Assembly: GCA_965644265.1 (NCBI GenBank)
Contig: OZ286471.1
Location: 25,358,001 to 25,422,000 of the forward strand
Direction: 5' to 3'
Origin: Glycera tridactyla
Lineage: Eukaryota
DNA: 64,000 nt
The translations under genes were made by a program, and so were the position numbers. Within the stretch, counting starts at the first letter, position 1; each line of letters starts with the position of its first letter. Shown here one piece after another: positions 3,844 through 33,011 of the stretch. A model generated the notes under the pieces. It did no database searches and was not told the DNA's origin. It was given only the letters and a program-made list of their open reading frames with translations.

Positions 3844-4794
3844 TAGATTCCGTCCATCCGACGATGCTTGCCTGTCTGCCTACCTACCACCCCATCACCC
3901 ATCCATCTATCCATCCATCCATCCATCCATCCATCCATCCATCCATCCATCCATCCATCCATCCATCCATTATCATCATTTCTATAATAATAATAACAAT
4001 GATAATNNNNNNNNNNNNNNNNNNNNNNNNNNNNNNNNNNNNNNNNNNNNNNNNNNNNNNNNNNNNNNNNNNNNNNNNNNNNNNNNNNNNNNNNNNNNNN
4101 NNNNNNNNNNNNNNNNNNNNNNNNNNNNNNNNNNNNNNNNNNNNNNNNNNNNNNNNNNNNNNNNNNNNNNNNNNNNNNATTTCACCAAGGCTTGGACCGA
4201 AGTCGCATTACAAGCAACAGTGTACAGATGAGAAGGCATATATACATTTACAAAATACCAATAGTAACAATGGAGTAGCAGCTGGTAACACAGGATGATA
4301 TTTACAGATGAAAGATTATGAGGTCATGACAGCTGGTAAGGATGATGGCTATGACGAATGGGCTTATGATGAGTGATACTATTGACACTGGTATATGCAG
4401 GTTCACGATATACATAAGTCGTTACACTCCGTCTTACCAAAGTGATGACGTCTATGAAGGTATGTATTGAAAGAATGTATTGACGGTTATAGACAAGATT
4501 CAGGTGATGGAGTAGGAGATTGGATGTAATAGATCTAATCATGATGAGGACTATTGATTAAGCTTTTCTTATTGAGGACAATACAGACAAATTTCTAAAG
4601 GTGCCAGCACCCATGTTTCCCTACCCACCTACCATCACCATAATATAATCCGATGTGGTTGTTCGGATGTGTAGAGGGTTTGTAACCAGTTATGTTACCT
4701 ACACTCCTACATTCAGAACCCAGTATTATAGTAGAGGATGGATCAGAGAAATCATACTGAGGTAGTGTCATGTATTTAACTTGAAACTCTTATT

Positions 4795-7650
4795 TCATAA
4801 TTTCAAACTGAAATAAGATTTACAATTTCGCTTCATGATATAGTAGGAGGTGCTCTCTCTCACATGTAGAGGCAAGGAGTTCCATAACTTGATTCCTCTT
4901 ACTATAACACTACCAGCCGCAAAGTGTGTTCGTAGCCGAGGTAACTGGAGGTCGTTGTTGACCGTCTGTCTTGTTATTCTACTAGACACATTGGATCTAG
5001 TTAGAAGCCTGGTTGCATGCCTGTCATTGAGCGGTTCTTTCAGCATTTTGTACATTTCACATGCCAACTGCCTGTCTTGATATTTGTCCAAAAGTGGGAC
5101 TTTTAATGCTTTATGGCACTCGGTCGCAGAATAGCACCTCGGATTGTTCCATACCACCCGTAATGACCTATTTTGGGCCATTTGCAGCCTATGTGCGGCT
5201 TGCATATTCATACTGGCATAGACGTGCCCGTTGTAACTCAACAATGACTGTATCAGAGAGTGGAATAGAAATAGTGCCCTGTTGGTGCTAATATAGGGCC
5301 TTATGTGGGCCAGGGCTGATTTTCTAATGTTAATTTTCTTAATCAAGTAGTTGGCATGTGAGTCAAAAGTAAAGCTGCTATCCAGCATTATGCCCAAGTA
5401 CTTATATTCATCAACACGTTGAATTGAGTGTGACTCATACTGAAGGGATGTCATATTAATGCTACGTACCTGAGGGCGTGTCCCAAAAATCATGACAGAT
5501 GACTTTTTCAAGTTAAGGGACAATTTCATATATCTAAACCACTGACACAATGCACCTAGATCGCTCTCTAATTTCTCAACTAAGTCCAACTCACTTCGTG
5601 CACTTGCACAGATAGCCGTATCATCAGCATACAAGTATGGGATACATTGTCTCAAGACGTTAGGGAGTTCATTTACGTAGATGGCAAAAAGTAGGGGCCC
5701 AAGGATTGAGCCTTGAGGCACCCCACATATTACTTCGCGATCAGAAGACAGCACATTCTCATATTTGACCGTCTGTTTGCGCTCCGACAGATAGGAACTA
5801 AACCATTCCACAGTTCCATATCTGAAGCCGATTTCGCGCAGCCTATCAAGCAGCCGATCGTGGTCCACAGTGTCGAACGCCTTCTTCAGATCCAGGAAAA
5901 GAACTCCAGTGGGGCATGACCGATCAGCCTCCGTGAAAATGGTTTCAAGGAAGCTGGTCAGGCATGCCCCCGTCGAGTATCCCTCCCTAAATCCGAATTG
6001 GGCGTTCGACAAGATATTATATCGGGTCAGATATGCGTATACCTGCTTATGTACTAATTTTTCCATAATTTTGCCGAGTGTCGGTATTATGGAAATCGGT
6101 CTAAAGTTCGTCAGGTGCAGATCATTCCCCCCTTTGTGAAGTATAGTCACTACGCTTTCCTTCCAGGTATTTGGAAAAGTATGTGTAGATATTGACATGT
6201 TGCATATTCTAGTAAGCGCATGTAAGATATTTGCCGGGAAATTGCGACATAGTTCGACTGATATCCCATCTTTCCCGGTCGACAGAGTGTTGTTCATTTC
6301 CTTTATAACTTTTCGTATGTCATCTGAGTCGACCGGGCCTAGCTTGAAAACAGGTTGATATCGGATAACATGATGTGGTGGTGTATCCACATGTGGGATT
6401 TTACTCGCCAGGTTTCTACCTATATCACAGAAAAAATCATTTATCTCACAGGCTCTGCTATGATTATCGTCCTGTTCTAGTATTGGCGCAGCACACTTCT
6501 TTTTTGTAAGAGGCCACAGTTCCTTGATAGATCGCCACATTTTTTTGGGATCATGTTCGTGACGCTCGATGTTTTCTTCTACATAAGTGCTGATCAAATT
6601 CTTTTTCAATAAATATTTTCTGCGTAGGGCCTCTTTTTTCAACTCCAGATTCATGTAAGTAGGGCACTTTTGAAAAATGTATGACCTGTACTCGCATAGA
6701 TCTATTAAACTTAGAAAATCAGAATTTACCCATGGTTGGTACATTTCTCTGAATCTACGCGTCTTTATGGGTGCATGAATATCCAAGCACGCTCTTATAT
6801 GTGTTTGTAGATAATTTGTCGCAAGGTTAGGATCTGACGTTGTATCAACAAAATTGGTGTCAATTTTACTCAGTGAAAGGTTGAAGTCATCTCTGCGGAA
6901 ATTCCTGTAACTACGAAATTGGTACTCACGTTTACGGCGATAAATTTTTGCCCTCTTTCTACACACAAACACCATTGCATGATCGCTTATGCCTGGACTT
7001 AGCACACCCGATCTGTTAAAGTAGCTACTATTAGACACAAGGATATGGTCGATAATGGTACTTGACGAGGTGGTCACGCGAGTTGGACTTGATATCAGCT
7101 GTTGCAAACAATGGTCCTTCATGTGATCACGATATGCCTTCTGGCCAGCACCACGTGATTTGCTCACATCAATATTCACATCCCCTAGCATTAAAACATC
7201 AAAAGTGCTCCAGTATTCAAATAGTTTTTCATGACAGTTGGACAAGTGATTAAGACATTCATCCACATGGCCGTCTGGAGGGCGATAGATAGCACAAATG
7301 ACCAGTGGACGACACTTTTGCAGATACAGTACAAACCAACCAGTCTCTACAGCTGGTGAGCAAGTCGAGAGCTCAGATAGCATGTTTACATTATACTGTG
7401 AACCATAATAGATAATGCACCCACCACCTCCCGATTTACCACTTTCCTCAGTGCGGTCCAGTCTGATAAATTCATAACCAGCTATACTCAGTTCTTCGTC
7501 ACCAATGCTGTCATTCAAAAAGGTTTCTGTCAGGATCAGAAAGTCCAATTTACTTTGGGATAGTAGGAGCCGTATGTCATCAATTTTCCTTGTAATACTT
7601 TGCACATTTAAAGCAGCAAATGAGATACCGGGGACGTTTGAAAGCGAGGC
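4795..7650 (-). CDS. LINE A ORF2: APE endonuclease plus reverse transcriptase
   Basis: APE motifs (ALNVQS, LILTETFL, YRPP, LGDVNID, IDHI, SDH) and RT motifs (NFRPISII, QFGFR, LDLKKAFDTVDH, GVPQGSILGPLLF, YADDT, YKYLG). The frame is open from 7650 (after a TGA) to the stop at 4795; the track calls it from GTG 7605 (936 aa). Confidence 0.95.
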   Translation of the reverse strand, partial: ASLSNVPGISFAALNVQSITRKIDDIRLLLSQSKLDFLILTETFLNDSIGDEELSIAGYEFIRLDRTEESGKSGGGGCIIYYGSQYNVNMLSELSTCSPAVETGWFVLYLQKCRPLVICAIYRPPDGHVDECLNHLSNCHEKLFEYWSTFDVLMLGDVNIDVSKSRGAGQKAYRDHMKDHCLQQLISSPTRVTTSSSTIIDHILVSNSSYFNRSGVLSPGISDHAMVFVCRKRAKIYRRKREYQFRSYRNFRRDDFNLSLSKIDTNFVDTTSDPNLATNYLQTHIRACLDIHAPIKTRRFREMYQPWVNSDFLSLIDLCEYRSYIFQKCPTYMNLELKKEALRRKYLLKKNLISTYVEENIERHEHDPKKMWRSIKELWPLTKKKCAAPILEQDDNHSRACEINDFFCDIGRNLASKIPHVDTPPHHVIRYQPVFKLGPVDSDDIRKVIKEMNNTLSTGKDGISVELCRNFPANILHALTRICNMSISTHTFPNTWKESVVTILHKGGNDLHLTNFRPISIIPTLGKIMEKLVHKQVYAYLTRYNILSNAQFGFREGYSTGACLTSFLETIFTEADRSCPTGVLFLDLKKAFDTVDHDRLLDRLREIGFRYGTVEWFSSYLSERKQTVKYENVLSSDREVICGVPQGSILGPLLFAIYVNELPNVLRQCIPYLYADDTAICASARSELDLVEKLESDLGALCQWFRYMKLSLNLKKSSVMIFGTRPQVRSINMTSLQYESHSIQRVDEYKYLGIMLDSSFTFDSHANYLIKKINIRKSALAHIRPYISTNRALFLFHSLIQSLLSYNGHVYASMNMQAAHRLQMAQNRSLRVVWNNPRCYSATECHKALKVPLLDKYQDRQLACEMYKMLKEPLNDRHATRLLTRSNVSSRITRQTVNNDLQLPRLRTHFAAGSVIVRGIKLWNSLPLHVRESTSYYIMKRNCKSYFSLKL

Positions 7651-8285
7651 AGAGCAATAATCTAAGTCAGACAGTGGTTCAGCACTAGGGAAAACATGGG
7701 TGATACGACGACGGTTATTTGGTAGGATGCTGATGGTAATAAGTGGTATTGAGTGAAACTAGTAGGAGGAATAAAGATGAATAAAGGTAGAAGAGAAAGT
7801 AAGGATAGATTGAAAAGTAGGCGTGATAGACCTGGATGTGCTAAGATGTAACTCCTCGCACTGGTTGTAATAGTCGTAATGGTCAAGCGGGTGAAAAATT
7901 AACCTGCATCTGACATGTTAAACAAAGACATCTGATAAATAAATAAAGCTATCTGCCTGCCTTCTGGAAAATTGGTTCACTCTGATTCATGACACTATCA
8001 TAAATCTATTCTTGATCAGCTTATTTACTAATGTCACCCAATCCGCTGTGTGCTACATGAGTAGTAGCATTATCCATATAATCAACATTCAAAGTTGGAA
8101 TTAAAGTCCAAACTGGCAGCAGGGTGAAACAACATCCATCGGACTGGTGGTAGAGAGCTGGCTGGAAGGGTTCGTTGTGGTTCATGGTATGGTGGAGCCG
8201 GAGTCTATGCGTTGATGCGGCCCTTCCCCAGATTTCACACATATCACGTCGCATATTATTACAAACTTGACGGGCACGCATGCAC

Positions 8286-9083
8286 GCGGCTGTATGTCAT
8301 CCGCTTGATTTCATACAGGCGAGATGTTTAGCCCTATTGCTGTTGTTGTGTGTATGTAACGATTGCAGTATCTCATGCTGCAGCATGTCAGCCGCATGGC
8401 TCCATGCCGGCATAACATCTTGCTGGAGTTGAAAGCACGTAACAAATGCACTATCTCACGCTGCAACATGTCGCCCGCATGACTTCATGTCGGCATGAGA
8501 TCTTACATCTATGTGCAGCTACATATCGATGACTGATGTTGCACTTCATGATTCATGATTCACCTCCCGATATCACATGCTGCAGCATGTCGCCCGCATG
8601 GCTCCGTGCCGGCATAGGATATCGCTTCTATCTCGTTTCAATAAAAAATCGTATGCCATACGAGAACGACCTTGTGCACAGTGTTAACGTACTCATTCAC
8701 GCAGCAGTGTGTCACCCGCATGGCTTCATACTGGCGATGTGTGTACACGTGTGCCGATGATGCTACCTCGAGCTGCAGCATGTTGCCCGCATGACTCCAT
8801 GCCGGCTCAAGGTAACGTTTGTTTTAAGCATGTTTCGATAATGTTGAGATCAACGTGGTGCACATACTCCCTCATGCACGTATCCGTATGTTGCCGTATG
8901 ACTTCATGCTGGCGATATACACCGACTCTTGTTTCTACCTTTGAGATACGGAGATAATTGTTACCACGAGCAGCAGCATGTTATCCGCATGACTCCATGC
9001 CGGCTCAGGTAGTGTTTCTCTTCCAAGATTGAGTTGTGCCATGACCTCGCAGCAATATGTTACCCGCATGGTTTCACATCGGC
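8286..9083 (-). repeat. Array of nine ~35-nt structured repeats with unique spacers inside LINE A
   Basis: Units at 8286-8320, 8377-8411, 8460-8494, 8579-8613, 8701-8735, 8772-8806, 8880-8913, 8970-9004 and 9049-9083. Approximate minus-strand consensus GCCGGCAUG RARYCAUGCGGRYRA CAUGCUG CWGC. Spacers are 36-87 nt. Confidence 0.9.
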
Positions 9084-9136
9084 GAATGTCACTACAGTCT
9101 CAATGTCGGTTCTGATGATTTTGGTGTAGATTATTG

Positions 9137-10195
9137 CTAGTACTTCTTTATAATGACTGATTTCAGGCGTTTAGGAGCCGGTGTCGCTTGTGATACCTTA
9201 CGTGTATCACCATCGTCATTTCTTACGAACAATGTTGATGCTGGCTGACGAGCCGCCGATGATTTAGGACGTCGTCGACGTGGCTTACGTTGAGTAATAT
9301 ACTTCTCTGGACATTCTGCTAGTTTCTTAGTCTTCCACCATTCGTAGATACTAGGAAGTATATCCAATAGTAAGGCCTCATTTCCAGTGTCGCTCAGATG
9401 AAGGTTGTCTTCACTGATGAAACTACTCAGAATATCGTCATATACGTCAATTCTATCATGCTGATATAGAGACGTTGGGAGTAGTTTACGCGTATGATGG
9501 GATATACGTAAGTTGGTGGTGACATAATAGTTTAGATAGTCCGCTACGTTGCGTGCATGCTCACACCAGCCTCGACGTGGGATGATAGGGACAATTCCAC
9601 AGGGTACATTGGTGTATGATTTTTTGAAAAAATTCATCAAATTCAGCACTTCCGGTTCCAGTTGTTGCTTCCAAATTTTTGATTCAATCGGAGCTTTCCA
9701 GTTGAAATTATATCTTGTATTTGTATCCCGAATCTGCTTTAGATGCCCATTACAGTCATCTGCATCATTAGATCCTATTAGGAAAACGAAGTAGTCTGGT
9801 TGGTAGGCCGAGTCACTCAGGGAGGACCATTGATCACCAAAGATCCTTACCTTTTTTTCCGACATTTTCCTACCTTGCAGGTTGTCTTCGAGTGTCCAGT
9901 ATTTGGCACCACCCACTGCAAGAGATCTAACGGAGGATGGATTCACATATTGGAGAAGGTGATGGTCATCTTCCAGATGATGTATATAATCCACAAGGTG
10001 AACTGCATGGGAGGCTCCAACAAACGTAATTTTCGGTAATCCAAATGAGTCTGCGATGATTCTTGCCTGTGACATATGTATTCCTCCAAGTCGTTGAATA
10101 CGAGCTTTCGCCATTTTGTCATCTTCTATGGATCGTATCACCGATGAGGGATAGATCCGTTTTACCTGTCTTTTGTATATTGGTTGCAGACTCAT
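9137..10195 (-). CDS. LINE A free-standing SGNH/GDSL-like hydrolase (esterase) ORF, 352 aa
   Basis: Block I FVGASH (catalytic Ser), block II AVGGA, block III LIGSND, block V EDNLHL (DxxH). Basic C-terminal tail RKPRRRRPK. Confidence 0.8.
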   Translation of the reverse strand: MSLQPIYKRQVKRIYPSSVIRSIEDDKMAKARIQRLGGIHMSQARIIADSFGLPKITFVGASHAVHLVDYIHHLEDDHHLLQYVNPSSVRSLAVGGAKYWTLEDNLQGRKMSEKKVRIFGDQWSSLSDSAYQPDYFVFLIGSNDADDCNGHLKQIRDTNTRYNFNWKAPIESKIWKQQLEPEVLNLMNFFKKSYTNVPCGIVPIIPRRGWCEHARNVADYLNYYVTTNLRISHHTRKLLPTSLYQHDRIDVYDDILSSFISEDNLHLSDTGNEALLLDILPSIYEWWKTKKLAECPEKYITQRKPRRRRPKSSAARQPASTLFVRNDDGDTRKVSQATPAPKRLKSVIIKKY

Positions 10196-10197
10196 AT

Positions 10198-12618
10198 TTA
10201 GTATCGACCTCGTCTGCCACGTCTATCATGAGTGGGTTCTGGCCACTCTCTGTCCCAAAGTGATTGTATGTCTCTATTATATTGTCCGGTGCCCTGCCAA
10301 CTATTACGTCTTGTGTTATTGTCGCGGTCGTCATACGCATGGGTATGCTCATTTCCAGCATGTCTGCTTACGTTTTGGATGTCTTTAAACCGTCGGGCGT
10401 TTGAAGGTCGGTGACCGCGGCTAAAAACATGCTCATACGGTAGAGGCGGGTCATAATGACTGGCGCGCCGGTTGCTCTTTTGTTGACCTATTTCTGATTG
10501 ATTCCTGTAATTGATTGATTGTGTAGTATTGTCTGGCCGTCTGTTATCGTTCGTGGTATTCATCATGAGAGTGCCGTTCCCGTTTCTAGGGGCATTATCC
10601 GTGTTGTTGTTAGGAGCATCACGATTAGTATTCCGTGGTCTCATTTCCCCGCGATTTTTCATAGCTTCTGTATTTATCATACGTAGTTTTTCATGGTCTG
10701 TTAGAATGCTCGGTTTCGAGTTTGGTTCTTCTTGGGCCCAAATTAGACCATCGTGGGTCCAGACTTTACTTAGTAGGTTGTGTTTTTTAGCAGCTCTCGC
10801 TTCATAGAACACCTTGCTATTTTTGGTAGTCAGGAATTCCTTGAAGAAGATTGATGTCCCGCGTAGTTTTCCCTTGCATTTCATTAGATGCCTCTTTAGA
10901 TCAACATCCCTCAGTTTCACCAATATTGGTCGTGGTTCGTCCGTTGATGGCTTGCCAATGAAAACACACTTTACAAAGTCTTTATGAGATAAGCTCAAAC
11001 CCAGTCTGTCACAGATCTCATATCCTACATTATCTAAGAGGGAGTAGTCCGGATCTAGATTCAGTCCCTCGATAATTAAGCAGTTTAGGCGGTCTGATAG
11101 CTCCAAATTTTCCAGTCTGTATTCTGTATTCTGAGGGAGCAGACTATCACCAGTCATCTGTTGATTGATGTCTTGTGGTTCCAGTGGATCATCTATTGAC
11201 AATCTCTCAATGTTGCTTTTCAACATGGTGATAGTGCGAGTGTGTTCCTCCAGGTCCCGATTCATCCTGCGGAGCTGGTTCGAGAGGTTCAACATCTCAC
11301 CGCTAACCTCCCTGAGGACAGTATCTCTTATCTTAGTTGTTAACTCAGCTTCCACTTTCGCTCTCAGATCATTTTCAAGAATCTTCCTGAGGTCATCTAG
11401 CAAATCGGATTTTAGACTAGATATGAGGTCAGGCGGTATCTTAGTGAGACAAGGCGCTTCTTCGGCGCATGCATCTATTTCATTGACGGCAGATTGATCA
11501 TTCCCTGGCCTTGGGTTTGTACCTGCTTGAGTATCAAGTAACCCCCACCCATCAAGCTCACCTAGGGGTTCTATGTGGTTTGACAATGAGCTGTTATGGG
11601 AGATTTGTGTTGGAGGAGAGTCATGTGGTACTTGCCCGGGTTGAAATGGTTCTACATCCCCATCATCATGGATTGCTGCTTCTAATTCCATTTCCGAGGC
11701 CGACTCTGTTTCAGATCCTGATTCATCCGAGGTGTGATCGGAGCCAGTGTCATTTTTTGGATCTAAGGGACTTTCACTCTTCGTATTGGGTTTCTTGGTT
11801 GCAACCCCAGTACCTGTGATGTCATCAGGAGAGGCCGTATGGTGTCTACGTTTTCGTTTACGTTTTCTCTTGTCTTTTTTTGATGATGAGTTGGACGTAT
11901 CCCCAGGTTTGACTGTAGATTGGATGGGAGTTTGGATAGGAGTATGAGCGTTCGATATCATCGGTTGTGCTTCTACTACTGTCTGCGTCTGTGCCTCTGA
12001 GCCACCGGTTAGTATTATACTCCCTTGGGTATCGGGCATGGTATTTTCTGGGGTGCTCGCAATTAGTTCCCCTAACAAATTCTTTATAGGATTTGAATGG
12101 GAATCAGAAAGAGTTGCTGTCTGTTCATCAAGTCTATCATCCACGGTTGTGTGTAAGTTTACAGTTGAGCGTATTGCATTTCGGATCACCTCGTTTGTTG
12201 CCTGCGTTGCAGGAGAATCCGCCGCAGCAGCTTCAGCTCCTTGTATTTGACCTTGTTCATTGGGGCGTGACTGCCAACAGGGTGCTGGCGGCATGAGAGG
12301 GTGTTCAACCAGTGAGTTCCTGTATGTTTTTCCCCCCGCCTTACTATCACCCTCTGGGGGGGCATTCAACCGGTCCACCGGCTGATTAGCATTGCGATCA
12401 ATGGGAGCTGGGGTTCTACCGGGACCGCAGGGTGGCGGGTTCGAACTTCTACGTGCATTATCGCTCACCTTTGTTTCTTTTGAGAAATCAATGTTCGCAT
12501 GCCTCCACATCGACTCCAGGATAGACTCCTTCCTTGTCTTTGTGTCGTTTGGTTTCTTGGTGGTTTCCCCTTTCTTCTCGTCACCTTTGCCATTTCGTAG
12601 ATTGTTTCCAGAAGGCAT
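10198..12618 (-). CDS. LINE A ORF1, 806 aa: disordered N-terminus, coiled coil, L1/transposase-22-type RRM plus CTD, basic tail
   Basis: Heptad-rich segment (LKSDLLDDLRKILENDL...LKSNIERL) followed by LENLELSDRLNCLIIEGL...PRPILVKL...IFFKEFLT...VWTHDGLIW, typical of type II LINE ORF1p. Confidence 0.85.
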   Translation of the reverse strand: MPSGNNLRNGKGDEKKGETTKKPNDTKTRKESILESMWRHANIDFSKETKVSDNARRSSNPPPCGPGRTPAPIDRNANQPVDRLNAPPEGDSKAGGKTYRNSLVEHPLMPPAPCWQSRPNEQGQIQGAEAAAADSPATQATNEVIRNAIRSTVNLHTTVDDRLDEQTATLSDSHSNPIKNLLGELIASTPENTMPDTQGSIILTGGSEAQTQTVVEAQPMISNAHTPIQTPIQSTVKPGDTSNSSSKKDKRKRKRKRRHHTASPDDITGTGVATKKPNTKSESPLDPKNDTGSDHTSDESGSETESASEMELEAAIHDDGDVEPFQPGQVPHDSPPTQISHNSSLSNHIEPLGELDGWGLLDTQAGTNPRPGNDQSAVNEIDACAEEAPCLTKIPPDLISSLKSDLLDDLRKILENDLRAKVEAELTTKIRDTVLREVSGEMLNLSNQLRRMNRDLEEHTRTITMLKSNIERLSIDDPLEPQDINQQMTGDSLLPQNTEYRLENLELSDRLNCLIIEGLNLDPDYSLLDNVGYEICDRLGLSLSHKDFVKCVFIGKPSTDEPRPILVKLRDVDLKRHLMKCKGKLRGTSIFFKEFLTTKNSKVFYEARAAKKHNLLSKVWTHDGLIWAQEEPNSKPSILTDHEKLRMINTEAMKNRGEMRPRNTNRDAPNNNTDNAPRNGNGTLMMNTTNDNRRPDNTTQSINYRNQSEIGQQKSNRRASHYDPPLPYEHVFSRGHRPSNARRFKDIQNVSRHAGNEHTHAYDDRDNNTRRNSWQGTGQYNRDIQSLWDREWPEPTHDRRGRRGRY

Positions 12619-12800
12619 TTTGGAGGTTTTTTCACGACCGCGGTGTGACGTAGTGTGCTACTCCATGCTTTCCCCATGTCCTCCTTGATAATAATAGTAT
12701 TATGGCAGTATAAACACCACAACAGTTGTCACTGACTGATTGTATTTTTCGTTACAAAATAAAGTTTATTACAAGTACAATTGCTCGCATTTTATCGTTA

Positions 12801-12835
<35 letters not shown>

Positions 12836-13959
12836 TCATTATCATTATTTATTTATCATTCACATTACCATTATTATCATCATTATTACAATCATCACCA
12901 NNNNNNNNNNNNNNNNNNNNNNNNNNNNNNNNNNNNNNNNNNNNNNNNNNNNNNNNNNNNNNNNNNNNNNNNNNNNNNNNNNNNNNNNNNNNNNNNNNNN
13001 NNNNNNNNNNNNNNNNNNNNNNNNNNNNNNNNNNNNNNNNNNNNNNNNNNNNNNNNNNNNNNNNNNNNNNNNNNNNNNNNNNNNNNNNNNNNNNNNNNNN
13101 NNNNNNNNNNNNNNNNNNNNNNNNNNNNNNNNNNNNNNNNNNNNNNNNNNNNNNNNNNNNNNNNNNNNNNNNNNNNNNNNNNNNNNNNNNNNNNNNNNNN
13201 NNNNNNNNNNNNNNNNNNNNNNNNNNNNNNNNNNNNNNGGATNNNNNNNNNNNNNNNNNNNNNNNNNNNNNNNNNNNNNNNNNNNNNNNNNNNNNNNNNN
13301 NNNNNNNNNNNNNNNNNNNNNNNNNNNNNNNNNNNNNNNNNNNNNNNNNNNNNNNNNNNNNNNNNNNNNNNNNNNNNNNNNNNNNNNNNNNNNNNNNNNN
13401 NNNNNNNNNNNNNNNNNNNNNNNNNNNNNNNNNNNNNNNNNNNNNNNNNNNNNNNNNNNNNNNNNNNNNNNNNNNNNNNNNNNNNNNNNNNNNNNNNNNN
13501 NNNNNNNNNNNNNNNNNNNNNNNNNNNNNNNNNNNNNNNNNNNNNNNNNNNNNNNNNNNNNNNNNNNNNNNNNNNNNNNNNNNNNNNNNNNNNNNNNNNN
13601 NNNNNNNNNNNNNNNNNNNNNNNNNNNNNNNNNNNNNNNNNNNNNNNNNNNNNNNNNNNNNNNNNNNNNNNNNNNNNNNNNNNNNNNNNNNNNNNNNNNN
13701 NNNNNNNNNNNNNNNNNNNNNNNNNNNNNNNNNNNNNNNNNNNNNNNNNNNNNNNNNNNNNNNNNNNNNNNNNNNNNNNNNNNNNNNNNNNNNNNNNNNN
13801 NNNNNNNNNNNNNNNNNNNNNNNNNNNNNNNNNNNNNNNNNNNNNNNNNNNNNNNNNNNNNNNNAGGCAGACAGGCAGGCATTGTCGTCGTCCCATCCAT
13901 TGTCTAGTATTGTCAACATGATCCCCCTCCCCCCTCCCTCTCAGCAAGCCACCAAGAGT

Positions 13960-26484: not shown

Positions 26485-27600
26485 TCAATCTGGAGGGGAT
26501 ACCACCTTCTGACCCGCAACAATTGGGCCAAGTGAATAGAGATCTAGTGCTTGACCGCACATGTCCCTCAAGTAATGTGTTGTAAATGTATTCCCAGATC
26601 TCCAATATGCAGCCTGCATAATCTCATTGATAGATGAGGACCTATTGAACGCTGTCCATGAGGCAGCCAAGGCCCTCGTCTCATGAGCTGAAACCCTGTC
26701 TTCTATCTGAGACTGTAAATTTTCCTGCTCATGAGACTTCATGATGATTGACTGCAACCATTCGGTGATCTGATCTGCCCTTATTTCCTTAGACGAACTT
26801 CGCGAAATAGGGATGAAAAGTCTACGTCATGCTGATCTGTAATCAGCAACTCTCTTCAGATAGTGTTCCAATGCTCTAACCGGACACAGTTTCTTCTGAT
26901 CATCATCAGAACCTGGTAGAGCTGGAATCTCTATAAATGGACTCTCCTTGTCGGGTGGTTGGTTTTTCGCCAAAAACCCAGGCATCATAGTCAAAATAAC
27001 TTTGGAGTTAGACCTTGTGAATCTCACTGCCCCTGGATCTCCAGACAGAGCGTGCAATTCACTTCTTCTCCTTCCTGATGCCAATGCTATCAGGAAGACT
27101 GTCTTCATAGTCAAGGACTCGGTATCTGAATCCCCTAGGGGTTCAAATCTATCTGATATTAGATATCTTAGAACTGTAAATTCCAGGATGGTACCAATTT
27201 CTTGGTAACCGGTCGTTCCAAGGAAAAGTTCCTGAATAGGTCTTTAATGTCCTTGCTATCCAAGAGATTGTTTCCATAGTGGTACAGTACTGACTTGATT
27301 GCTGATTTGAAACCTTTCAGCGTTTCCAAACTCTTCCCCTGATCCCATAGGGATGGAAAGAAAATAATAATCAAGGGTAAAGTGGGATTGGTTAGATCAG
27401 TCCGGTTATCCCTACAGCTTTGGTTCCAAATTTCCCATCGTGCATTGTATACCCTTCTGGTAGAGGCTCTAGTTGGTTCTGATATTCTGATGACTGCATC
27501 AGCTGCATAGCCCTTGCGCCTAAGGGCTGACCTGATAAACACCAGGCGTGAAGGTTCAGAGATTGAGGAGACAGATGATTCAACCTCTTCCCCTTCACGA
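26485..27600 (-). pseudogene. DIRS tyrosine recombinase (YR), frameshifted
   Basis: Fragments carry STRRVYNARW, VPSWNL, LIALASGRRRSELHAL (catalytic R), CPVRAL, SAHETRA (HxxR), AAYW and FTTHYL (catalytic Y), split over three ORFs (C-terminal half of 27168-28754, 26827-27114, 26485-26757). Confidence 0.9.
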
Positions 27601-29450
27601 CCTGGGTTAGCACATTTCTGGGAACTGGTAACTCCAGAGGTCTCAGTATCGCTAGCTCCAACAGATCGTGAAACCAGGCCTGATTCGGCCACCATGGTGC
27701 TATACACACCAGAATCAGGTCTAGTCCCCTTAATCTGTTGAGAACCTCTCTGATTAATGCAGTAGGAGGGAACACATAAGCTGATCCGAACTGGCTCCAC
27801 TGGACAGATAAGGCATCTACTCCGAATGCTGCTGGGTCTGGTACTGGACTTATGAAAACTGGCAACTTCCTGTTGCTGTGAGTCGCCATGAGGTCTATCA
27901 TTGGACTGATGTTCCAAACTGATAATATCTTCTGGAATATAGTCTGTTCCAACTCCCATTCGGTTTGAACAGGCTTTGCCCGGGACAAAGAATCTGCTAG
28001 TACATTTCGTTTCCCAGGGATATGATGTACTCTGATATAAGCTCCCTGATGATTCACCAACATCAGGATCTGCCAGGCGAGTCCACACAGGAACGAGCTG
28101 TGCGTCCCCCCCTGATTTTTCAGATAAGCAACCGTTGTCGCATTGTCTGAGAGAACTAAAATCGTTCTCCCTCTGATCTGGTTGGTGAACTCCTTCAATG
28201 CCAATAATACTGTTTCTAACTCGAGAGAGTTGATTGACTTCGGGAGGCCAAATCCCTGACACCTGTGTCCTTATACTCTCTCCTACCAGATGAGCCCCCC
28301 AACCTGTTAGGGATGTATCGGTTGTTATCGTTAGTTCTGGCTCTGGAAACACTAGAGGAACTCCTGACCTGGTGTTGTTCCTGTCCTTCCACCAATCCAA
28401 AATCCCCAGAATCTCTTCTGGAAGAGGAATGAGAATCTCCAAACTGTCTGAGATTGGTTTCCATTGGCTTAGAAGACAAAGTTGAATGGGTCGCATGTGC
28501 AGTTTGCCCAGATGTATATAATCTGACAGACTGGACATGTGACCCAGCAACTTGAGAACTGCGCGAGCAGGCTGAATGGGTCTTCTCTTGAAAAGTCTTA
28601 AACATCCCTCCAACCTCTCCAATCTGTTGAGAGTTGGACGAACAATCTGATCTCTGGTGTTGAACTCCACACCGAGGTAAATGAATTCCTGGCGAGGAAT
28701 GAGTTCCGACTTTTCTTGATTGATGATCCAGCCCAATTCTGTGGCTAGAATCATTGTATATTAGAGCTGTTGTATAAGGATTGATTGGTCTTGGTGGCGT
28801 ATCAACCAATCGTCCAGGTATAAATGTATCTTTATACCTCTCATGTGTAGATGGTGAGCCATCTCCCTTAGAACCATCGTAAAAATTTGAGGGGCAGAGC
28901 ATAGGCCGAATGGTAGGGCCTGAAACTGATATGCTCTGTCCCTGGAAACTGCAAATCTTAGAAATCTTTGATGGTCTTTCCGAATTGGAACATGAAAGTA
29001 TGCGTCCCGAAGGTCGATCGAAACCGACCAATCCCCGGGACGCACCGACTTCACCACTGATCTCACCGTTTCCATTTTGAACTTTGCGTTGAACATGAGT
29101 CTGTTCAGGGGCTTCAAGTTGATGATGGGACGAAACCCGCCCGAAGACTTTGTGACAAGAAAGAGGTTGCTGTAAAACCCTGACTTGCACCCCGGTACAA
29201 GGGGAACAATCGCCCCCTTGTCCAACATTTTTTGAATCTCCTCGTAGAGAGCTTTGAATTTTGGACTTCCTTTTGGAGGACCCGAGAATGGTAAGAAGTC
29301 TTCTGAAAGGGTAGGACTTATTTTGAACTGAAGAGTGAGACCCTCGCTGATAATATTCAGCACGAAACGGTTGTTGGTCAGTTTCCGCCAAGGCTCCACA
29401 AACTGGTTCAGCCTGGCTTCTACTTGTTCCAAGGGAGAGGCTCTCACACT
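27392..29450 (-). pseudogene. DIRS RT - RNase H - Dam-like methyltransferase, with a nonsense codon and a frameshift
   Basis: RT: FRPIINLK, IDLRDAYFH, FQALPFGL, YLDDWLI. RNase H: TDTSLTGWGA, SDNATTVAYL, HIPGKRNVLADSLSR. MT: IDLMAT, AYVFPP. In-frame TAA at 28761-28763 and a frameshift near 28220. Confidence 0.9.
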
Positions 29451-29451
29451 C

Positions 29452-32400
29452 CTAGGGCCGACGACCTCTGCCACGACCTCTCCTGAAAGGTCTCCTATCT
29501 CCTCTAGTCTCCTGATTGCCTCTTGACTGAAAAGACTGAAACTGTGGCTGTTCTGACGTCTCAGGTTTCGACTGTGCCTGTGCACCTCTACCTTTGCCCC
29601 CACCACGAGTTGCACCCCCTCTTGATCTATTTGCAGATTTTGATTGACTCGGTGTATAGTCCTTATAGGTAGACTTCTCTTTATGACCCGAATACCCCAT
29701 CTTAAAATCATACTCTATGTTAGGATTTTTCTTCGATCTCTGCATGGATTGTGTTGACACCTCATCCAATCTTCCTCCAAAGAGGAATTTCTGGCCAAGA
29801 GGGAGGGACCTGAGTTGTGCTTTAGCAATGTCATCAAAGTGCAACGTTTTTATGGCTTTGTCTCTCCTAGCGAGTTCCATGTTACTAGCCACCTTTGAAA
29901 TAAGTACGGTAACATGCTCTAGAGCTTTAAGACCAATGTTCATGGCCCTATCTGCTCTTTCAGCTAGGTCCTCCATGGACTCAAACTCAGGTTGAGATGA
30001 CCTCAAACCTGCTGCCAAAGCCAAGTCTGCATACGACATTACTTTGAGTGCTTCTCGTACCATGAACTCCTCAGAAGTAGGCATGAGCTCTAGTTTATTA
30101 GTTCTACCAAACGTGTAGTAATCACCATCAATGAGAGGTGGAACAACAATGTAACCCTCATGTCTAGACTCAGTTGGTCTGATTTTATAGACCCGTTGAT
30201 TACAACCAGGTACCACAGGGACATTGGACTTGAATGTTCGTGTAAGAGCATCAGATGTACCACTATTGCTCTCTATGAAAGAATCAAGAGGAGCATCCGG
30301 TGGATTGGTTGCTCGATTCTGATCCCTATTCTGAAGAGCCCTATCCAAAAACGTCTGGACATTAAATACTGTAGGAGACAAGGGAAGGGAAAGATCGATC
30401 ATCTTTTGTGTCTCAGTCTGCCTATGCTCATCCTTGAAAGAGGTATTCATTTCCCTAGCAGCTGCACTAAACCTTCCTACAAGGAAAGGATCAGGCTGCC
30501 CAATATACTGAGTTAGGACTTCTGAGGCAAAACGTCTGAAATCCACCATTCTCCTACTGGGAACTGCTTTCTCCTGTTCTCCTTCATCCTGTTCCTGAAG
30601 ATTAAGGGTTGTATCCTCGACTGCCTCCTTCGCAGATTTCAACTCCTCTCTCATTTCCTTCATTTCCATCCTTAATGACTGGACCAGAGCATTTGTTGAT
30701 AAATTCTCTGTATCCTGCTCAACTCCGGTTATGGGGCCTGGAGGTGATGGAGGAGCTACAGAAACAGTAGCAGGAGCATTTTTAGCCTTCATACGATTCC
30801 ACCAACTTCTATCCCTAGCTTTACTTGGTGGATCCTGATCACTTGACAGCACAATCTCCCTCTTTTTCAGCCCTACTTCAGGAGCTGTCGGAATATTCAC
30901 CTGCCTAGTGCCACTAGCTCCTACAGTAAACTTTGTATGAAGATTCTGAATAGAAAGTACTGCTAATCTAGAAGCAGGATCGGCTACTGATCCCTCTGAG
31001 CCAAAAACTGCTGTAGGAAGCTTAGGAACAGGAGTAGTACTAGGTACATGAGAAGCATGAGAAGGGAGGGTTGCTAACACCTGAGGACGTCTCTGCCTGG
31101 TGCCTGGTCTCTGCCCGGTGCCCGGTCTCTTCCCTGTGCCCGGTACCTGTCCGGCACCTGTAGCTGTATCTGGTTCTTCATCATCGTCTGAACCTAACCA
31201 TACTACATCATTTTCCTCCCCAATATCATCTGAATTGTCACCAGAAGGACGTGCATCAGTCTCCCGGCTATGCAGACCGATCTGAGTGACTTGTGCCCGG
31301 TGCCCAGGTGGTAGTAATGACTGCCCGGCGCCCGGTGAAGAGATATTCACCTGTTTGTCTCCAGAAGGATGTGCATCAATCTCCCAACTATGCAGACCGA
31401 TCTGAGTGACTTGTGCCCGGTGCCCAGGTGCTAGTAATGACTGCCTGGTGCCCGGTGAAGAGATATTCACCTGTTTGTCTCTAGAAGGATGTGCATCAAT
31501 CTCCCGACTATGCAGACCCATCTGAGTGACTTGTGCCCGGTGCCCAGATCCTAGTAATGACTGATCGGCGCCCGTTGTAGTGATATTCGTTTCACAACAG
31601 TACTCGGAGTTACAGTACTTGACTCACTATGCTCTTTACTCTTCATTACATCTCTTCTAATCTCACAGGGTGAATCACGATACGATACCCGGTGCTGGCT
31701 CACTTTAGTGCCTATGGCCTGAGGTAACTTTGCCTTGGTTGGCCTAGTGCCCGATGCCCGCTCATCAACAGAATACTCTTCAATATTCTTGTTTAGCTTG
31801 ATAATTCTGAACTCTAATTCAGGATCTTGTTCAGGTAACTGACTCATGGAAATATTGAGTCCTTCTTGTTCTGATTGATCTGCAGCTGAAGATCTAGAAT
31901 CATTTGAACCTGGACCACTAGCTCTACCTCTCCTAGCCTTCTGTACTCTGGGGGTACTAGTAACGATCGGTGCTTTTGCCTTGGTTACTTTAATAGGATA
32001 TAAGGGAGGTCTGAAGGACAACCCCTGTGCTGCTGACCAATCAGATTCCTGGCTAGTATCTAGATCCTTCTGTTCAGTATCAGCGAGCCTCCGAGCCGAA
32101 CATGAGGTTGTAGGGTCAGATCTCACCGACAGTTTAGTTGACTTCGGAGTCTGAAATATATCTTTGGATTGTAATGCCTTAGACGCTGCTCTAGCATCAC
32201 CATCCTTCCCAGCTGCAATTACAGATTTCAAATCTCTGACAAGTCTGTTAGCAATAGTCTTAGGACCTGGAAGCTCAGCAGAACGAGCACTGGAACTACC
32301 TGCTCCTTTGGCGTATTTCCGTGCTTTGTATGTACGTCTTTTATAATGCTTCTTCCAAGTCTCAGGGGACCAGTGTTTGCACACCTCGCACACCACTTCT

Positions 32401-32510
32401 TCACCAAACTCATCCCTGCCCTTCCCACAGGACCGACAAGAAGGACAAAGTTTGTGCTGGTCCCAAGCCGCCAGGAAATGACCACATTCCCCGTGCAATG
32501 ACATGATATA
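29452..32510 (-). pseudogene. DIRS ORF1 (gag-like) with N-terminal Cys/His zinc-finger, split by a frameshift
   Basis: CGH...H.LCPSCRSC...CEVC at the N-terminus. ORFs 31551-32582 and 29452-31521 are in different frames, and the break sits inside a 120-bp tandem repeat. Confidence 0.75.
31244..31590. repeat. 120-bp tandem repeat (40-aa unit) inside DIRS ORF1
   Basis: CTCCCnnCTATGCAGACC recurs at 31261, 31381 and 31501. The unit encodes GLHSREIDAHPSRDKQVNISSPGTRQSLLAPGHRAQVTQI. Confidence 0.9.
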
Positions 32511-33011
32511 CAGTACAGTGATACACACAGCCCCGAAGGGCTCCTGAAATGATATGAAAATCACAGACCTACGTCGAAGCACAAGTCATTTCAAACAGTT
32601 CAACTGAGGACAATGCTGAGCACGCGCGAGCGCACCCAGAAAGCTCTAAACGCCACTACCGCCGAAATAACGATAACGGACACTCCTTGCTTGTGTCTAT
32701 GAATAATCCGATATCTAGGCGTGTTATTCCAGGCCGCGACGTGCGTAGGCGAGATAAAGGCTGAGAATATCGAAATTATTCTCGGGGAATTTTCTCCCGT
32801 GACCGTTAGCGATGGCCGAAAGAAGAAAATACGACGCGCACATGCGCATTTGCCGTCAGTTTGAATGGACGGAGCTTACTCCAGATGGAGCTATAGGACG
32901 GAGTATGGGAGAGGTCCATCTAGTATCATTCTTTTTCACTATTGTTGTGAAAGTTCGGCGTAGGCGGTTAGGCATGGGGGATGCAGAATTTGAGGGAGAG
33001 ACAGGGACGGT

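What the first reader, a model, noticed from the sequence alone, without database searches (positions are those of the whole stretch)
8286..9083. Repeat-spacer array of nine covarying RNA hairpins inside a LINE, between the esterase and RT ORFs
Nine ~35-nt repeats are separated by unique 36-87-nt spacers (44, 56, 73, 36, 87, 84, 48, 56 nt from the 5' end). On the element-sense (minus) strand the units fold the same way; unit 8880-8913 is the most degenerate. From base to tip: (1) a variable lower stem made by each unit's own flanks, e.g. GUUACCUUGAGC/GCUCGAGGUAGC around 8772-8806, CGAUAUCCUAUGC/GCAUGUGAUAUCG around 8579-8613, AUCUCAUGC/GCGUGAGAU around 8460-8494; (2) a 2-nt 3' bulge (CA/CU/CC); (3) a 7-bp stem with compensatory changes (CGGCAUG/CAUGCUG, CGACAUG/CAUGUUG, CUGUAUG/CAUACAG, CGAUGUG/CAUAUUG); (4) a 2x2 all-purine internal loop; (5) a 3-bp stem that also covaries (GCC/GGC, ACC/GGU, AUC/GAU, GUC/GGC); (6) an AUGCG-type loop. 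G-U pairs work only on the minus strand, which points to RNA rather than DNA structure. Shared flanks (units 2/4, 3/5, 6/7/8) suggest growth by duplication, with spacers diverging while the fold was kept. I know of no described LINE with such an array. Inferred functions: multivalent binding sites for ORF1p or the SGNH protein (RNP packaging), an internal translation re-entry element for the downstream ORF2, or a processed small-RNA cassette.
Basis: partly seen in the sequence, partly recalled or inferred. Interest (0 to 1): 0.92.

Follow-up and report, generated by a model that had tools for sequence, protein, structure and literature searches.

The report
Covarying RNA hairpin array inside a LINE
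A retrotransposon (LINE) carries nine copies of one small RNA hairpin between its esterase gene and its reverse-transcriptase gene, and two related LINE families from other assemblies carry their own hairpin arrays at the same place, so this is probably an undescribed cis-acting RNA signal of this LINE clade.

Summary
Nine co-oriented units lie at 8271-9099, between the SGNH-esterase ORF and the APE-RT ORF of a minus-strand LINE, and nowhere else in the window. The 15-pair consensus is 92% paired, with seven compensatory pairs. G-U pairs outnumber A/C mismatches 19 to 4 on the sense strand. Lower stems are unit-specific and the spacers are unrelated.

New here: two related LINE families (ORF2 37% identical) have arrays of their own at the same position. 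L016/L017/L018 has eight units, all cells paired, and five of six pairs compensatory. L009 has at least four long hairpins. Each family has its own hairpin sequence on a similar plan: stem, 2x2 internal loop, 3-bp stem, small loop. Rfam and the literature searches gave no match.

My best reading (about 0.4) is a family-specific, multivalent binding platform for an element-encoded protein that nucleates the RNP. ORF2 translation control is the main rival. Function is untested.

First readers flagged similar arrays in other windows of this genome; those notes are unchecked. LINE B in this window and several relatives lack an array.

The parts
10198..12618 (-). ORF1 of the LINE (806 aa)
   Evidence: ORF list. 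No Pfam family. A single-sequence AF2 model of residues 400-700 gives a confident ~75-residue helix, then a low-confidence beta-alpha-beta-beta-alpha-beta segment, which fits an RRM but does not show one. The C-terminus is basic and rich in R and G.
9137..10195 (-). SGNH/GDSL-type esterase ORF (352 aa) with a basic arginine-rich C-terminal tail. It starts 2 nt after the ORF1 stop codon.
   Evidence: Weak Pfam hits to Lipase_GDSL, below the curated cut-off. Homologous to the LINE B esterase (22% identity, E 1e-15) and to the N-terminus of the L016 783-aa ORF (31% identity, E 1e-32). The stop/start arrangement is seen.
8271..9099 (-). The whole array: nine hairpin units and eight unrelated spacers. 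It begins 37 nt after the esterase stop codon.
   Evidence: Covariance model R1 scores the nine units at 55-75 bits, and the next hit in the window scores 11 bits.
9039..9093 (-). unit 1 hairpin (subfamily C)
   Evidence: The MFE fold is the consensus hairpin, -19.8 kcal/mol, z -2.3. Its own flanks give the best fold of the 9 swaps.
8960..9014 (-). unit 2 hairpin (subfamily A)
   Evidence: -24.0 kcal/mol, z -3.4
8869..8923 (-). unit 3, degenerate (subfamily C, 1-nt deletion in the loop)
   Evidence: z -0.08 and the lowest model score, 55 bits
8762..8816 (-). unit 4 hairpin (subfamily A), the most stable, 22 bp
   Evidence: -32.0 kcal/mol, z -5.8
8691..8745 (-). unit 5, partly degenerate (subfamily C)
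   Evidence: z -0.34, and the MFE is a different fold
8569..8623 (-). unit 6 hairpin (subfamily B)
   Evidence: -23.8 kcal/mol, z -2.4
8450..8504 (-). unit 7 hairpin (subfamily B)
   Evidence: -24.2 kcal/mol, z -4.4
8367..8421 (-). unit 8 hairpin (subfamily B). Its apical part folds as a 4-bp stem with a 4-nt loop.
   Evidence: -23.5 kcal/mol, z -3.2
8276..8330 (-). unit 9 hairpin (subfamily C)
   Evidence: -15.0 kcal/mol, z -1.5
7698..8270 (-). Leader between the array and ORF2. It contains a probably non-coding 86-aa ORF (8021-8281), a 209-nt ATG-free G-poor stretch, and a pyrimidine tract of about 70 nt at 7762-7830.
   Evidence: ATG depletion is not significant on its own because G content is only 10%.
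7695..7697 (-). ATG that corresponds to the ORF2 start codon of the relative L012 (MFPS.QPLSDLDY). In this copy it lies one base out of frame with the ORF2 reading frame.
4795..7758 (-). ORF2 reading frame (APE endonuclease + reverse transcriptase). The frame is open from 7758, and the ORF listing places the first start-like codon at 7605.
   Evidence: Pfam RVT_1 at 1e-35 and Exo_endo_phos at 1e-6; frame analysis

Best explanation
The array is an integral, selected, cis-acting RNA element of this LINE lineage. It consists of nine copies of a small structured hairpin in the sense transcript, directly downstream of the esterase ORF and upstream of ORF2. What is shown: the units fold on the sense strand, covary, keep invariant unpaired bases (A27 and A40 of the 2x2 loop, and the loop sequence), and sit among unconstrained spacers. 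Related LINE families carry their own arrays at the same place. What is inferred: each hairpin is a binding site for an element-encoded RNA-binding protein. Candidates are the esterase protein's arginine-rich tail, whose synthesis ends 37 nt upstream of the first hairpin, or ORF1p. The 8-13 sites together would form a multivalent, family-specific platform that nucleates RNP assembly on the element's own full-length RNA. That would give cis-preference, or self-recognition, and keep co-resident LINE families from using each other's proteins. In logic this is the non-LTR counterpart of retroviral Psi or of the dispersed packaging hairpins of ssRNA viruses.
For: Structure and selection:
- There are nine units, with none expected by chance.
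- Seven of nine have the consensus hairpin as their MFE fold.
- The 15-pair consensus is 91.9% paired, has 7 compensatory pairs (2/500 shuffles reach this) and a covariation score of 0.422 against 0.224.
- There are 19 G-U cells and 4 A/C cells on the sense strand.
- A unit's own flanks give the best fold in 5 of 9 units (one of these ties with a swap) and the second best in 2 of 9 in the swap test.
- Spacers are no more alike than shuffles.

Not a one-off:
- L016/L017/L018 has 8 units in its esterase-ORF2 spacer, 48/48 cells paired, and 5 of 6 pairs compensatory (0/500). Its ORF2 is 37% identical and its esterase 31% identical to LINE A's.
- L009 has at least 4 units upstream of ORF2, with a conserved apical module and unit-specific stems of 26-29 bp.
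- All of these sit in one RT clade with 100/99 support.

Protein-site reading:
- What is shared across families is the small apical module, not stem length or stability. L016 hairpins are only -5 to -11 kcal/mol.
- Unpaired bases are invariant within a family.
- Motifs differ between families that occur in the same sample, ERZ23486739. This argues for a co-evolving, element-encoded partner rather than a conserved host factor.
- Esterase-type ORF1 proteins are reported to lack RNA-binding domains but to carry arginine-rich motifs (PMC3905857).
Against: - No binding, expression or transposition data exist.
- The partner protein is a guess.
- LINE B in the same window has the same gene layout (ORF2 35% identical) but no recognisable array. 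Neither does L020 within 1.3 kb upstream of ORF2. So the array is not required by the clade as a whole.
- LINE B's esterase also has a basic KPRR tail.
- The units are paralogues within one copy, so shuffle statistics overstate independence.
- Other copies of LINE A could not be read.
- L009 and L016 may come from different hosts within the same metagenome.
- L009 shows one A/C mismatch on the sense strand.
Confidence: 0.4

Rival explanations
1. Translation control of ORF2. The array acts as an internal ribosome entry or landing platform, or as an insulator that stops ribosomes leaving the esterase ORF. ORF2 is then started from the unstructured leader that follows.
For: The esterase-ORF2 spacer has 54 AUGs where about 25 are expected, 38 of them in the array, so scanning through it is implausible. 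The array is followed by a G-poor, ATG-free leader of 209 nt in LINE A, 259 nt in L016 and 114 nt in L009. Relatives without an array have 29-77 nt. A pyrimidine tract of about 70 nt lies about 65 nt before the ATG at 7697. The array is always upstream of ORF2.
Against: The ATG depletion of the leaders is not significant given 10-11% G (P 0.07-0.46). L016 hairpins are too weak to block scanning. LINE B has the same dicistronic problem, with 23 AUGs in its spacer, but no array. Family-specific motifs are unexpected if the target is the conserved ribosome or initiation factors.
Confidence: 0.2
2. Binding sites for a host RNA-binding protein. The array would be a nuclear export, localisation or stability element, like the retroviral CTE or the NXF1-binding element of human L1.
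For: It offers repeated small hairpins with an internal loop and invariant unpaired bases. Intronless retroelement RNAs are known to use such elements (general knowledge, not tested here).
Against: The hairpin sequences of the three families are unrelated, although at least two of the families occur in one sample. A conserved host factor would be expected to hold the motif constant.
Confidence: 0.12
3. DNA-level feature: an internal promoter or enhancer made of repeated factor-binding sites that drives an ORF2-only transcript. This would be comparable to the monomer arrays of LINE 5' UTRs.
For: Repeat arrays upstream of the RT ORF are known in mouse L1 (general knowledge). Arrays of 1-5 subunits of 100-500 bp occur near the 5' UTR of ORF1-less CR1-group elements (PMC13343379). 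The ATG-free leader would suit a subgenomic 5' UTR.
Against: Compensatory changes keep pairing, which a protein-DNA site does not need. The strand asymmetry of 19 G-U to 4 A/C points to the sense RNA. The units are 26-55 nt with unique spacers, not head-to-tail monomers.
Confidence: 0.08
4. A non-functional variable-number repeat. A hairpin-prone sequence was duplicated by slippage or unequal exchange, and the apparent covariation is inherited from a few ancestral units.
For: The units fall into three subfamilies in the order C A C A C B B B C, so duplication is certain. Two units are decaying. Shuffle tests ignore relatedness (tool caveat).
Against: Spacers have diverged beyond recognition while the cores stay 68-100% alike. 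Double changes occur within and between subfamilies. Independent arrays with 100% pairing exist in another family. The array position is conserved across families.
Confidence: 0.1
5. A cluster of small-RNA precursors: miRNA-, siRNA- or piRNA-like hairpins processed from the LINE transcript.
For: LINE A and L009 units are imperfect hairpins of 22-29 bp, arranged like a polycistronic cluster.
Against: Conservation is apical (loop and internal loop), not in a 22-nt arm. Terminal loops are 3-6 nt. L016 units have only 6 bp. No Rfam miRNA family matched.
Confidence: 0.05

Closest known systems
Retroviral Psi and the dispersed packaging-signal hairpins of ssRNA viruses (MS2-type coat-protein sites)
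   Same: Several stem-loops share a short recognition motif in unpaired bases, their stems vary, and the motif is specific to each lineage. Multivalency is thought to nucleate protein assembly on the element's own genomic RNA.
   Different: No capsid or nucleocapsid protein is known for LINEs. Here the sites are a compact co-oriented array between two ORFs rather than in a 5' leader or spread over the genome. Binding has not been tested.
Arginine-rich-motif peptide and hairpin pairs (HIV Rev-RRE stem IIB, Tat-TAR, lambda N-boxB)
   Same: The targets are small hairpins whose recognition features are a purine-rich internal loop or bulge plus a small loop. The RRE also carries several sites that promote oligomerisation. 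The esterase ORF ends in an arginine-rich tail.
   Different: There is no sequence or structural homology, and the partner is hypothetical. LINE B has a similar basic tail but no array.
3' UTR stem-loop of stringent-type LINEs (UnaL2, ZfL2 and others) recognised by their own reverse transcriptase
   Same: It is a family-specific RNA hairpin of a LINE that marks the element's own RNA for its own protein.
   Different: That signal is a single hairpin at the 3' end, where reverse transcription starts. The array is internal and multi-copy, and models R1 and R2 find no similar hairpin in the readable 3' UTRs.
Monomer arrays in LINE 5' UTRs (mouse L1; 1-5 subunits of 100-500 bp in ORF1-less CR1-group elements, PMC13343379)
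   Same: They are lineage-specific repeats upstream of the RT ORF whose copy number varies.
   Different: Those are head-to-tail monomers of at least 100 bp that act as DNA promoters. Here the hairpins are 26-55 nt, have unique spacers, show RNA-type covariation, and lie downstream of two ORFs.
Inter-ORF translation signals of LINEs (mouse L1 ORF2 IRES; SART1 stop-start coupling)
   Same: They occupy the same position between the upstream ORF(s) and ORF2, and face the same problem of translating ORF2 from a polycistronic RNA.
   Different: The known signals are short and not repetitive. No hairpin array has been described for them (literature searches).
Polycistronic miRNA clusters
   Same: They are tandem paralogous hairpins separated by unrelated linkers in one transcript.
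   Different: The conserved part here is the loop and internal loop, not an arm. The loops are too small, and the L016 units are far too short.

Membership tests
Any Rfam 15 RNA family (ribozymes, miRNAs, IRES, cis-regulatory elements) | Covariance-model match at or near the family's gathering score | tested here: not met
   No match at E<=1 in 4500-13000, and none at gathering thresholds in the whole window.
Animal pre-/pri-miRNA hairpin cluster | A stem of about 33-35 bp (pri-miRNA) or about 22 bp plus a terminal loop of 10 nt or more, with conservation highest in the mature arm | tested here: not met
   The loops are 3-6 nt. The invariant columns lie in the loop, the internal loop and the stem junction. 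The units of the related L016 family have 6 bp.
Animal pre-/pri-miRNA hairpin cluster | Small RNAs of 20-24 nt derived from the arms | not testable with these tools
   No expression data are available.
LINE 5' UTR monomer (promoter) array | Head-to-tail monomers of about 100-500 bp at the 5' end, upstream of the first ORF | tested here: not met
   Tandem Repeats Finder finds no array. The units are 35-55 nt with unrelated spacers of 16-67 nt and lie downstream of ORF1 and the esterase ORF.
Stringent-LINE 3' stem-loop (RT recognition signal) | A hairpin at the 3' end of the element, next to the tail repeats | tested here: not met
   The array lies 3.5 kb upstream of the ORF2 stop codon. R1 finds no copy in the readable 3' UTR of LINE A (part of which is masked), and R2 finds none in the 3' UTR of L016.
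Kink-turn (L7Ae/15.5K-type site) | A 3-nt bulge followed by tandem sheared G.A/A.G pairs | tested here: not met
   The internal loop is a symmetric 2x2 loop (RA/RA) with no 3-nt bulge. The 2-nt bulge lies 7 bp away.
Inserted MITE, satellite or foreign repeat | Copies outside the LINE, terminal inverted repeats or target duplications, and absence from related elements | tested here: not met
   There is no copy elsewhere in the 64 kb. A metagenome scan gave only six single hits that look like chance. Related LINE families carry analogous arrays at the same site. The rest of this genome could not be searched.
Viral or retroviral packaging signal | Specific binding by the element's structural protein, and a requirement for encapsidation or RNP formation | not testable with these tools
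   Only the architecture (multi-copy, lineage-specific hairpins with conserved unpaired bases) could be examined.
IRES | Cap-independent internal initiation in a controlled bicistronic assay | not testable with these tools
   There is only context: an AUG-rich structured array followed by a G-poor ATG-free leader.
CR1/L2-type LINE with an esterase ORF (host element) | APE + RT ORF2 and an SGNH esterase encoded upstream | tested here: met
   Pfam finds RVT_1 and Exo_endo_phos in ORF2, and gives weak GDSL hits in the 352-aa ORF. The esterase is homologous to those of LINE B and L016. Assignment to a named clade (CR1, L2 and so on) was not tested, because no reference set was available.

The most novel reading that the evidence does not exclude
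This clade of non-LTR retrotransposons has evolved a Psi-like self-recognition code. Each family carries an array of 8-13 copies of its own small hairpin, read by a co-evolving element-encoded protein. This would give sequence-specific packaging and cis-preference, and would insulate co-resident LINE families from one another. No such mechanism is known for LINEs, whose ORF1 proteins are regarded as sequence-nonspecific.
Probability: 0.3. Interest if true: 0.85.

Novelty: new variant of a known kind. Interest (0 to 1): 0.74.

Why it matters
How a LINE RNA is chosen by its own proteins (cis-preference) is a long-standing open question. Known answers are co-translational binding and, for stringent LINEs, a single 3' hairpin. 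A multi-copy, family-specific, covarying hairpin array inside the element would be a new type of cis signal for non-LTR retrotransposons.

It is directly testable by binding assays, array swaps between families and reporter assays. It also offers natural orthogonal RNA-tag and binder pairs if a cognate protein exists. Even if the function turns out to be translational, it would be an unusual modular solution for expressing ORF2 from a three-cistron RNA.

Tried and rejected
- **Rfam:** a permissive search on the element and a gathering-threshold search on the whole window both found nothing.
- **Metagenome scan:** the 22-nt core pattern gave six single hits in unrelated contigs and no arrays. 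I treat these as chance.
- **Esterase homologues:** none were found by the word-indexed search, so relatives had to be reached through ORF2.
- **Relatives without an array:** L001/L002 have a NADAR ORF upstream, L011 and L014 have spacers of 100 nt or less, and L012 and L015 show only about 600 nt upstream. L019 is 5'-truncated into host DNA. L020 shows none in 1.3 kb.
- **Cross-family model searches:** R1 and R2 detect only their own family, so the three motifs are not alignable at sequence level.
- **Intron hypothesis:** I considered that the array is spliced out to give ORF2 an upstream start, because a pyrimidine tract ending in TAG sits exactly where the ORF2 frame opens. I dropped it after the relative L012 showed that ORF2 starts at an ATG homologous to 7697.
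- **Generic hairpin density scan:** it did not discriminate spacers from ORFs or from shuffles.
- **Loop targets:** a search for a complement of the loop elsewhere in the element (kissing partner) found only one 6-mer, which is the chance level.
- **ATG depletion:** it is suggestive in the leader but not significant.
- **ORF1 domain:** there were no PDB sequence matches, and the AF2 model is too poor for a fold search.
- **Host species:** the species of the related assemblies could not be identified.
- **CRISPR-like reading:** the 'repeat-spacer' layout resembles CRISPR only superficially. The element is eukaryotic, spacer lengths vary, and the repeats covary with their own flanks.

Full report
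**1. The observation**

The region 8271-9099 contains nine co-oriented repeat units. The repeat finder gives a nine-member family. A 20-nt degenerate core pattern with up to 3 mismatches hits exactly these nine places in the 64-kb window, with none expected in 100 shuffles. Tandem Repeats Finder reports no array, so the units are not head-to-tail copies. They are separated by unique sequence.

Once the whole hairpins are removed, the remaining spacers are 16-67 nt long and no more similar to each other than shuffled sequence.

**2. The host element**

On the minus strand, in order:
- ORF1, 806 aa, 10198-12618, with no Pfam family.
- A 352-aa ORF, 9137-10195, with weak GDSL/SGNH esterase hits.
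- The array.
- A 573-nt leader.
- An APE + reverse transcriptase ORF2, 4795-7605, with its frame open from 7758.

The esterase ORF starts 2 nt after the ORF1 stop codon. Both ends of the element run into masked N stretches, which I left alone.

The esterase assignment is backed by homology to the esterase ORF of a second LINE in the window and to an ORF of the relative L016 (31% identity, E 1e-32).

**3. Structure**

Folded as sense (minus-strand) RNA, seven of the nine units take the same minimum-energy hairpin. From base to tip it has:
- a unit-specific lower stem of up to 12 bp;
- a 2-nt 3' bulge;
- a 7-bp stem;
- a 2x2 purine internal loop;
- a 3-bp stem;
- an AUGCG loop.

The z-scores of these seven units against dinucleotide shuffles are -1.5 to -5.8. 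Units 3 and 5 are degenerate.

RNAalifold recovers the upper 15 pairs independently. On that structure:
- 91.9% of cells pair, against 82.8% in shuffles (0/500).
- Seven pairs carry changes on both sides, against 3.8 (2/500).
- The covariation score is 0.422, against 0.224 (0/500), and at most 0.198 when partners are slid.

The apical 3-bp stem moves between GC, GU and AU states through G-U intermediates. Overall there are 19 G-U cells and 4 A/C cells on the sense strand. On the opposite strand the ratio would be reversed, which points to RNA of the element's sense.

Columns A27 and A40 of the internal loop are invariant while their neighbours vary between G and A. From general knowledge of RNA motifs, this fits tandem sheared purine pairs.

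A swap test shows that the lower stems are unit-specific. With its own 3' flank, a unit gives the best fold in 5 of 9 cases (one of them tied with a swap) and the second best in 2 of 9. The mean is -24.4 kcal/mol with own flanks and -19.6 kcal/mol swapped.

The units form three flank subfamilies in the order C A C A C B B B C, so the array grew by duplication.

**4. Not a one-off: related elements**

Other copies of this LINE in the same genome could not be read. First-reader notes from other windows report arrays of 9-13 hairpins in LINE inter-ORF spacers. I treat these as unchecked leads.

Independent evidence came from relatives reached through ORF2. The closest proteins are only 35-41% identical.

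*L009.* This metagenome scaffold carries P0001. It has at least four co-oriented units in the 635 nt upstream of its ORF2, and the contig ends inside the array. Each unit folds into a long hairpin (-27 to -42 kcal/mol for the three complete units) with a conserved apical module and a unit-specific lower stem. The module has a 4-bp stem, a 2x2 loop, a 3-bp stem and a small loop.

*L016/L017/L018.* L016 and L017 come from two NCBI assemblies, and L018 comes from the same metagenome sample as L009. This family carries P0246, which is 37% identical to LINE A ORF2. It has the same layout: upstream ORFs, an esterase-containing ORF, a 1.1-kb spacer and ORF2.
- The spacer holds eight 26-nt units.
- Each folds as a 3-bp stem, a 2x2 loop (GA/GA or AA/RC), a 3-bp stem and a 6-nt loop, followed by a conserved YUUAG tail.
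- All 48 cells pair, and five of six pairs show compensatory change (0/500 shuffles).

Covariance models of the LINE A and L016 units detect only their own arrays and nothing elsewhere in the elements.

An ORF2 tree places LINE A, LINE B, P0001, P0246 and several others in one clade (100/99 support), with array-bearing families in both subclades.

Arrays are absent or unrecognisable in the following:
- LINE B of this window, which has the same layout and an ORF2 35% identical.
- L020, within 1.3 kb upstream of ORF2.
- Relatives with short spacers.

**5. What it is likely to do**

The feature shared by the three families is neither stem length nor stability. L016 hairpins are weak and 6 bp long, while LINE A and L009 hairpins are 22-29 bp. 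What they share is:
- a small apical module with family-invariant unpaired bases;
- many copies;
- the sense strand;
- a position between the esterase ORF and ORF2.

That is the signature of a repeated protein-binding site.

Each family has its own motif, and two families occur in the same sample. The partner is therefore more likely a co-evolving, element-encoded protein than a conserved host factor.

Candidate partners:
- The esterase protein. Its ORF ends 37 nt before the first hairpin and it has an arginine-rich tail. Esterase-type ORF1 proteins are reported to lack RNA-binding domains but to carry arginine-rich motifs (PMC3905857).
- ORF1p. It has a confident coiled coil and a possible RRM-like segment of low confidence.

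I therefore favour a multivalent, family-specific platform that nucleates the RNP on the element's own RNA (confidence 0.4). All of this is inference.

The main rival is control of ORF2 translation.
- The spacer has 54 AUGs against about 25 expected.
- The array is followed by a G-poor, ATG-free leader of 209 nt. The figure is 259 nt in L016 and 114 nt in L009, against 29-77 nt in relatives without arrays.
- The depletion is not significant on its own.

Other readings are less likely, for the reasons given under the rivals: a host-factor site, an internal promoter, a neutral repeat, or small-RNA precursors.

**6. ORF2 start**

The ORF2 frame has no in-frame ATG before the endonuclease domain. 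The relative L012 starts ORF2 with MFPS.QPLSDLDY. The matching ATG in LINE A, at 7697, is one base out of frame at a T run. So either this copy carries a small indel at the ORF2 start, or it uses a non-AUG start.

**7. Comparison with known systems and novelty**

Rfam has no match. Four full-text searches found no description of hairpin arrays between LINE ORFs.

The nearest published repeat feature is the array of 1-5 subunits of 100-500 bp near the 5' UTR of ORF1-less CR1-group elements (PMC13343379). That is a different thing.

In logic, the array resembles retroviral Psi or viral packaging hairpins, and ARM-hairpin pairs. Membership in any of these could not be tested. The defining features of miRNA clusters, monomer arrays, 3' RT-recognition hairpins, kink-turns and inserted repeats were tested and not met.

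I rate it a new variant of a known kind: cis-acting protein-binding RNA structures of retroelements. The architecture and location have not been described before.

**8. Limits**

- All units within a family are paralogues.
- No transcript, small-RNA or binding data exist.
- The host species of the window and of the related assemblies are unknown.

Noticed in passing
window 10193-10200 (minus strand): The ORF1 stop codon (UAG) is followed after 2 nt by the AUG of the esterase ORF, in another frame. This close stop-start arrangement is of the kind used for termination-reinitiation coupling in some LINEs and viruses.
   Followed up: partly
window 7695-7758 (minus strand): ORF2 has no in-frame ATG. 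The ATG that matches the start codon of a relative's ORF2 is one base out of frame at a T run. This copy may be slightly defective or may use a non-AUG start.
   Followed up: partly
window 51222-59088 (minus strand): A second LINE (LINE B) has the same ORF1-esterase-spacer-ORF2 layout. Its ORF2 is 35% and its esterase 22% identical to LINE A's. Its 871-nt spacer has no repeat array. It does have one very stable 37-bp hairpin (-47.7 kcal/mol) at 55056-55146, just after the esterase stop codon, and a CT-rich tract.
   Followed up: partly
window 56111-56450 (minus strand): Upstream of the LINE B esterase ATG there is an intron-like stretch: AAAG|GTAAGT near 56447, then a pyrimidine-rich stretch ending in TTTGTAG near 56125. 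This agrees with first-reader notes about introns in these LINEs. It was not tested.
   Followed up: no
window 40468-45051 and 27168-32582 (minus strand): There are two further retroelements. One is a third LINE, with a 1159-aa APE-RT ORF only 26% identical to LINE A ORF2, preceded by a 335-aa ORF after a gap of about 100 nt. The other is a block of ORFs that includes an RT domain. The window is dense in retroelements, all on the minus strand.
   Followed up: partly
L001 3916-5808 and L002 4016-6052: Distant LINE relatives (ORF2 28-30% identical) on long contigs of an ENA assembly encode a NADAR-domain (PF08719) protein as their upstream ORF. I have not seen this domain listed among ORF1 types.
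   Followed up: no
L013 1-248: A 124-nt inverted repeat, 97% complementary and with no gap between the arms, lies at the contig start, directly upstream of a truncated ORF2. It is probably an assembly fold-back artefact.
   Followed up: no
window 3900-3990: A (GGAT)n microsatellite in element sense lies just beyond the masked stretch that follows the LINE A 3' UTR. It may be the element's 3' tail repeat.
   Followed up: no
L016 6030-6653: Every hairpin of the L016 array is followed by a conserved single-stranded YUUAG (once YUUCG) 3-5 nt after the stem. This suggests that the recognised site extends 3' of the hairpin.
   Followed up: partly
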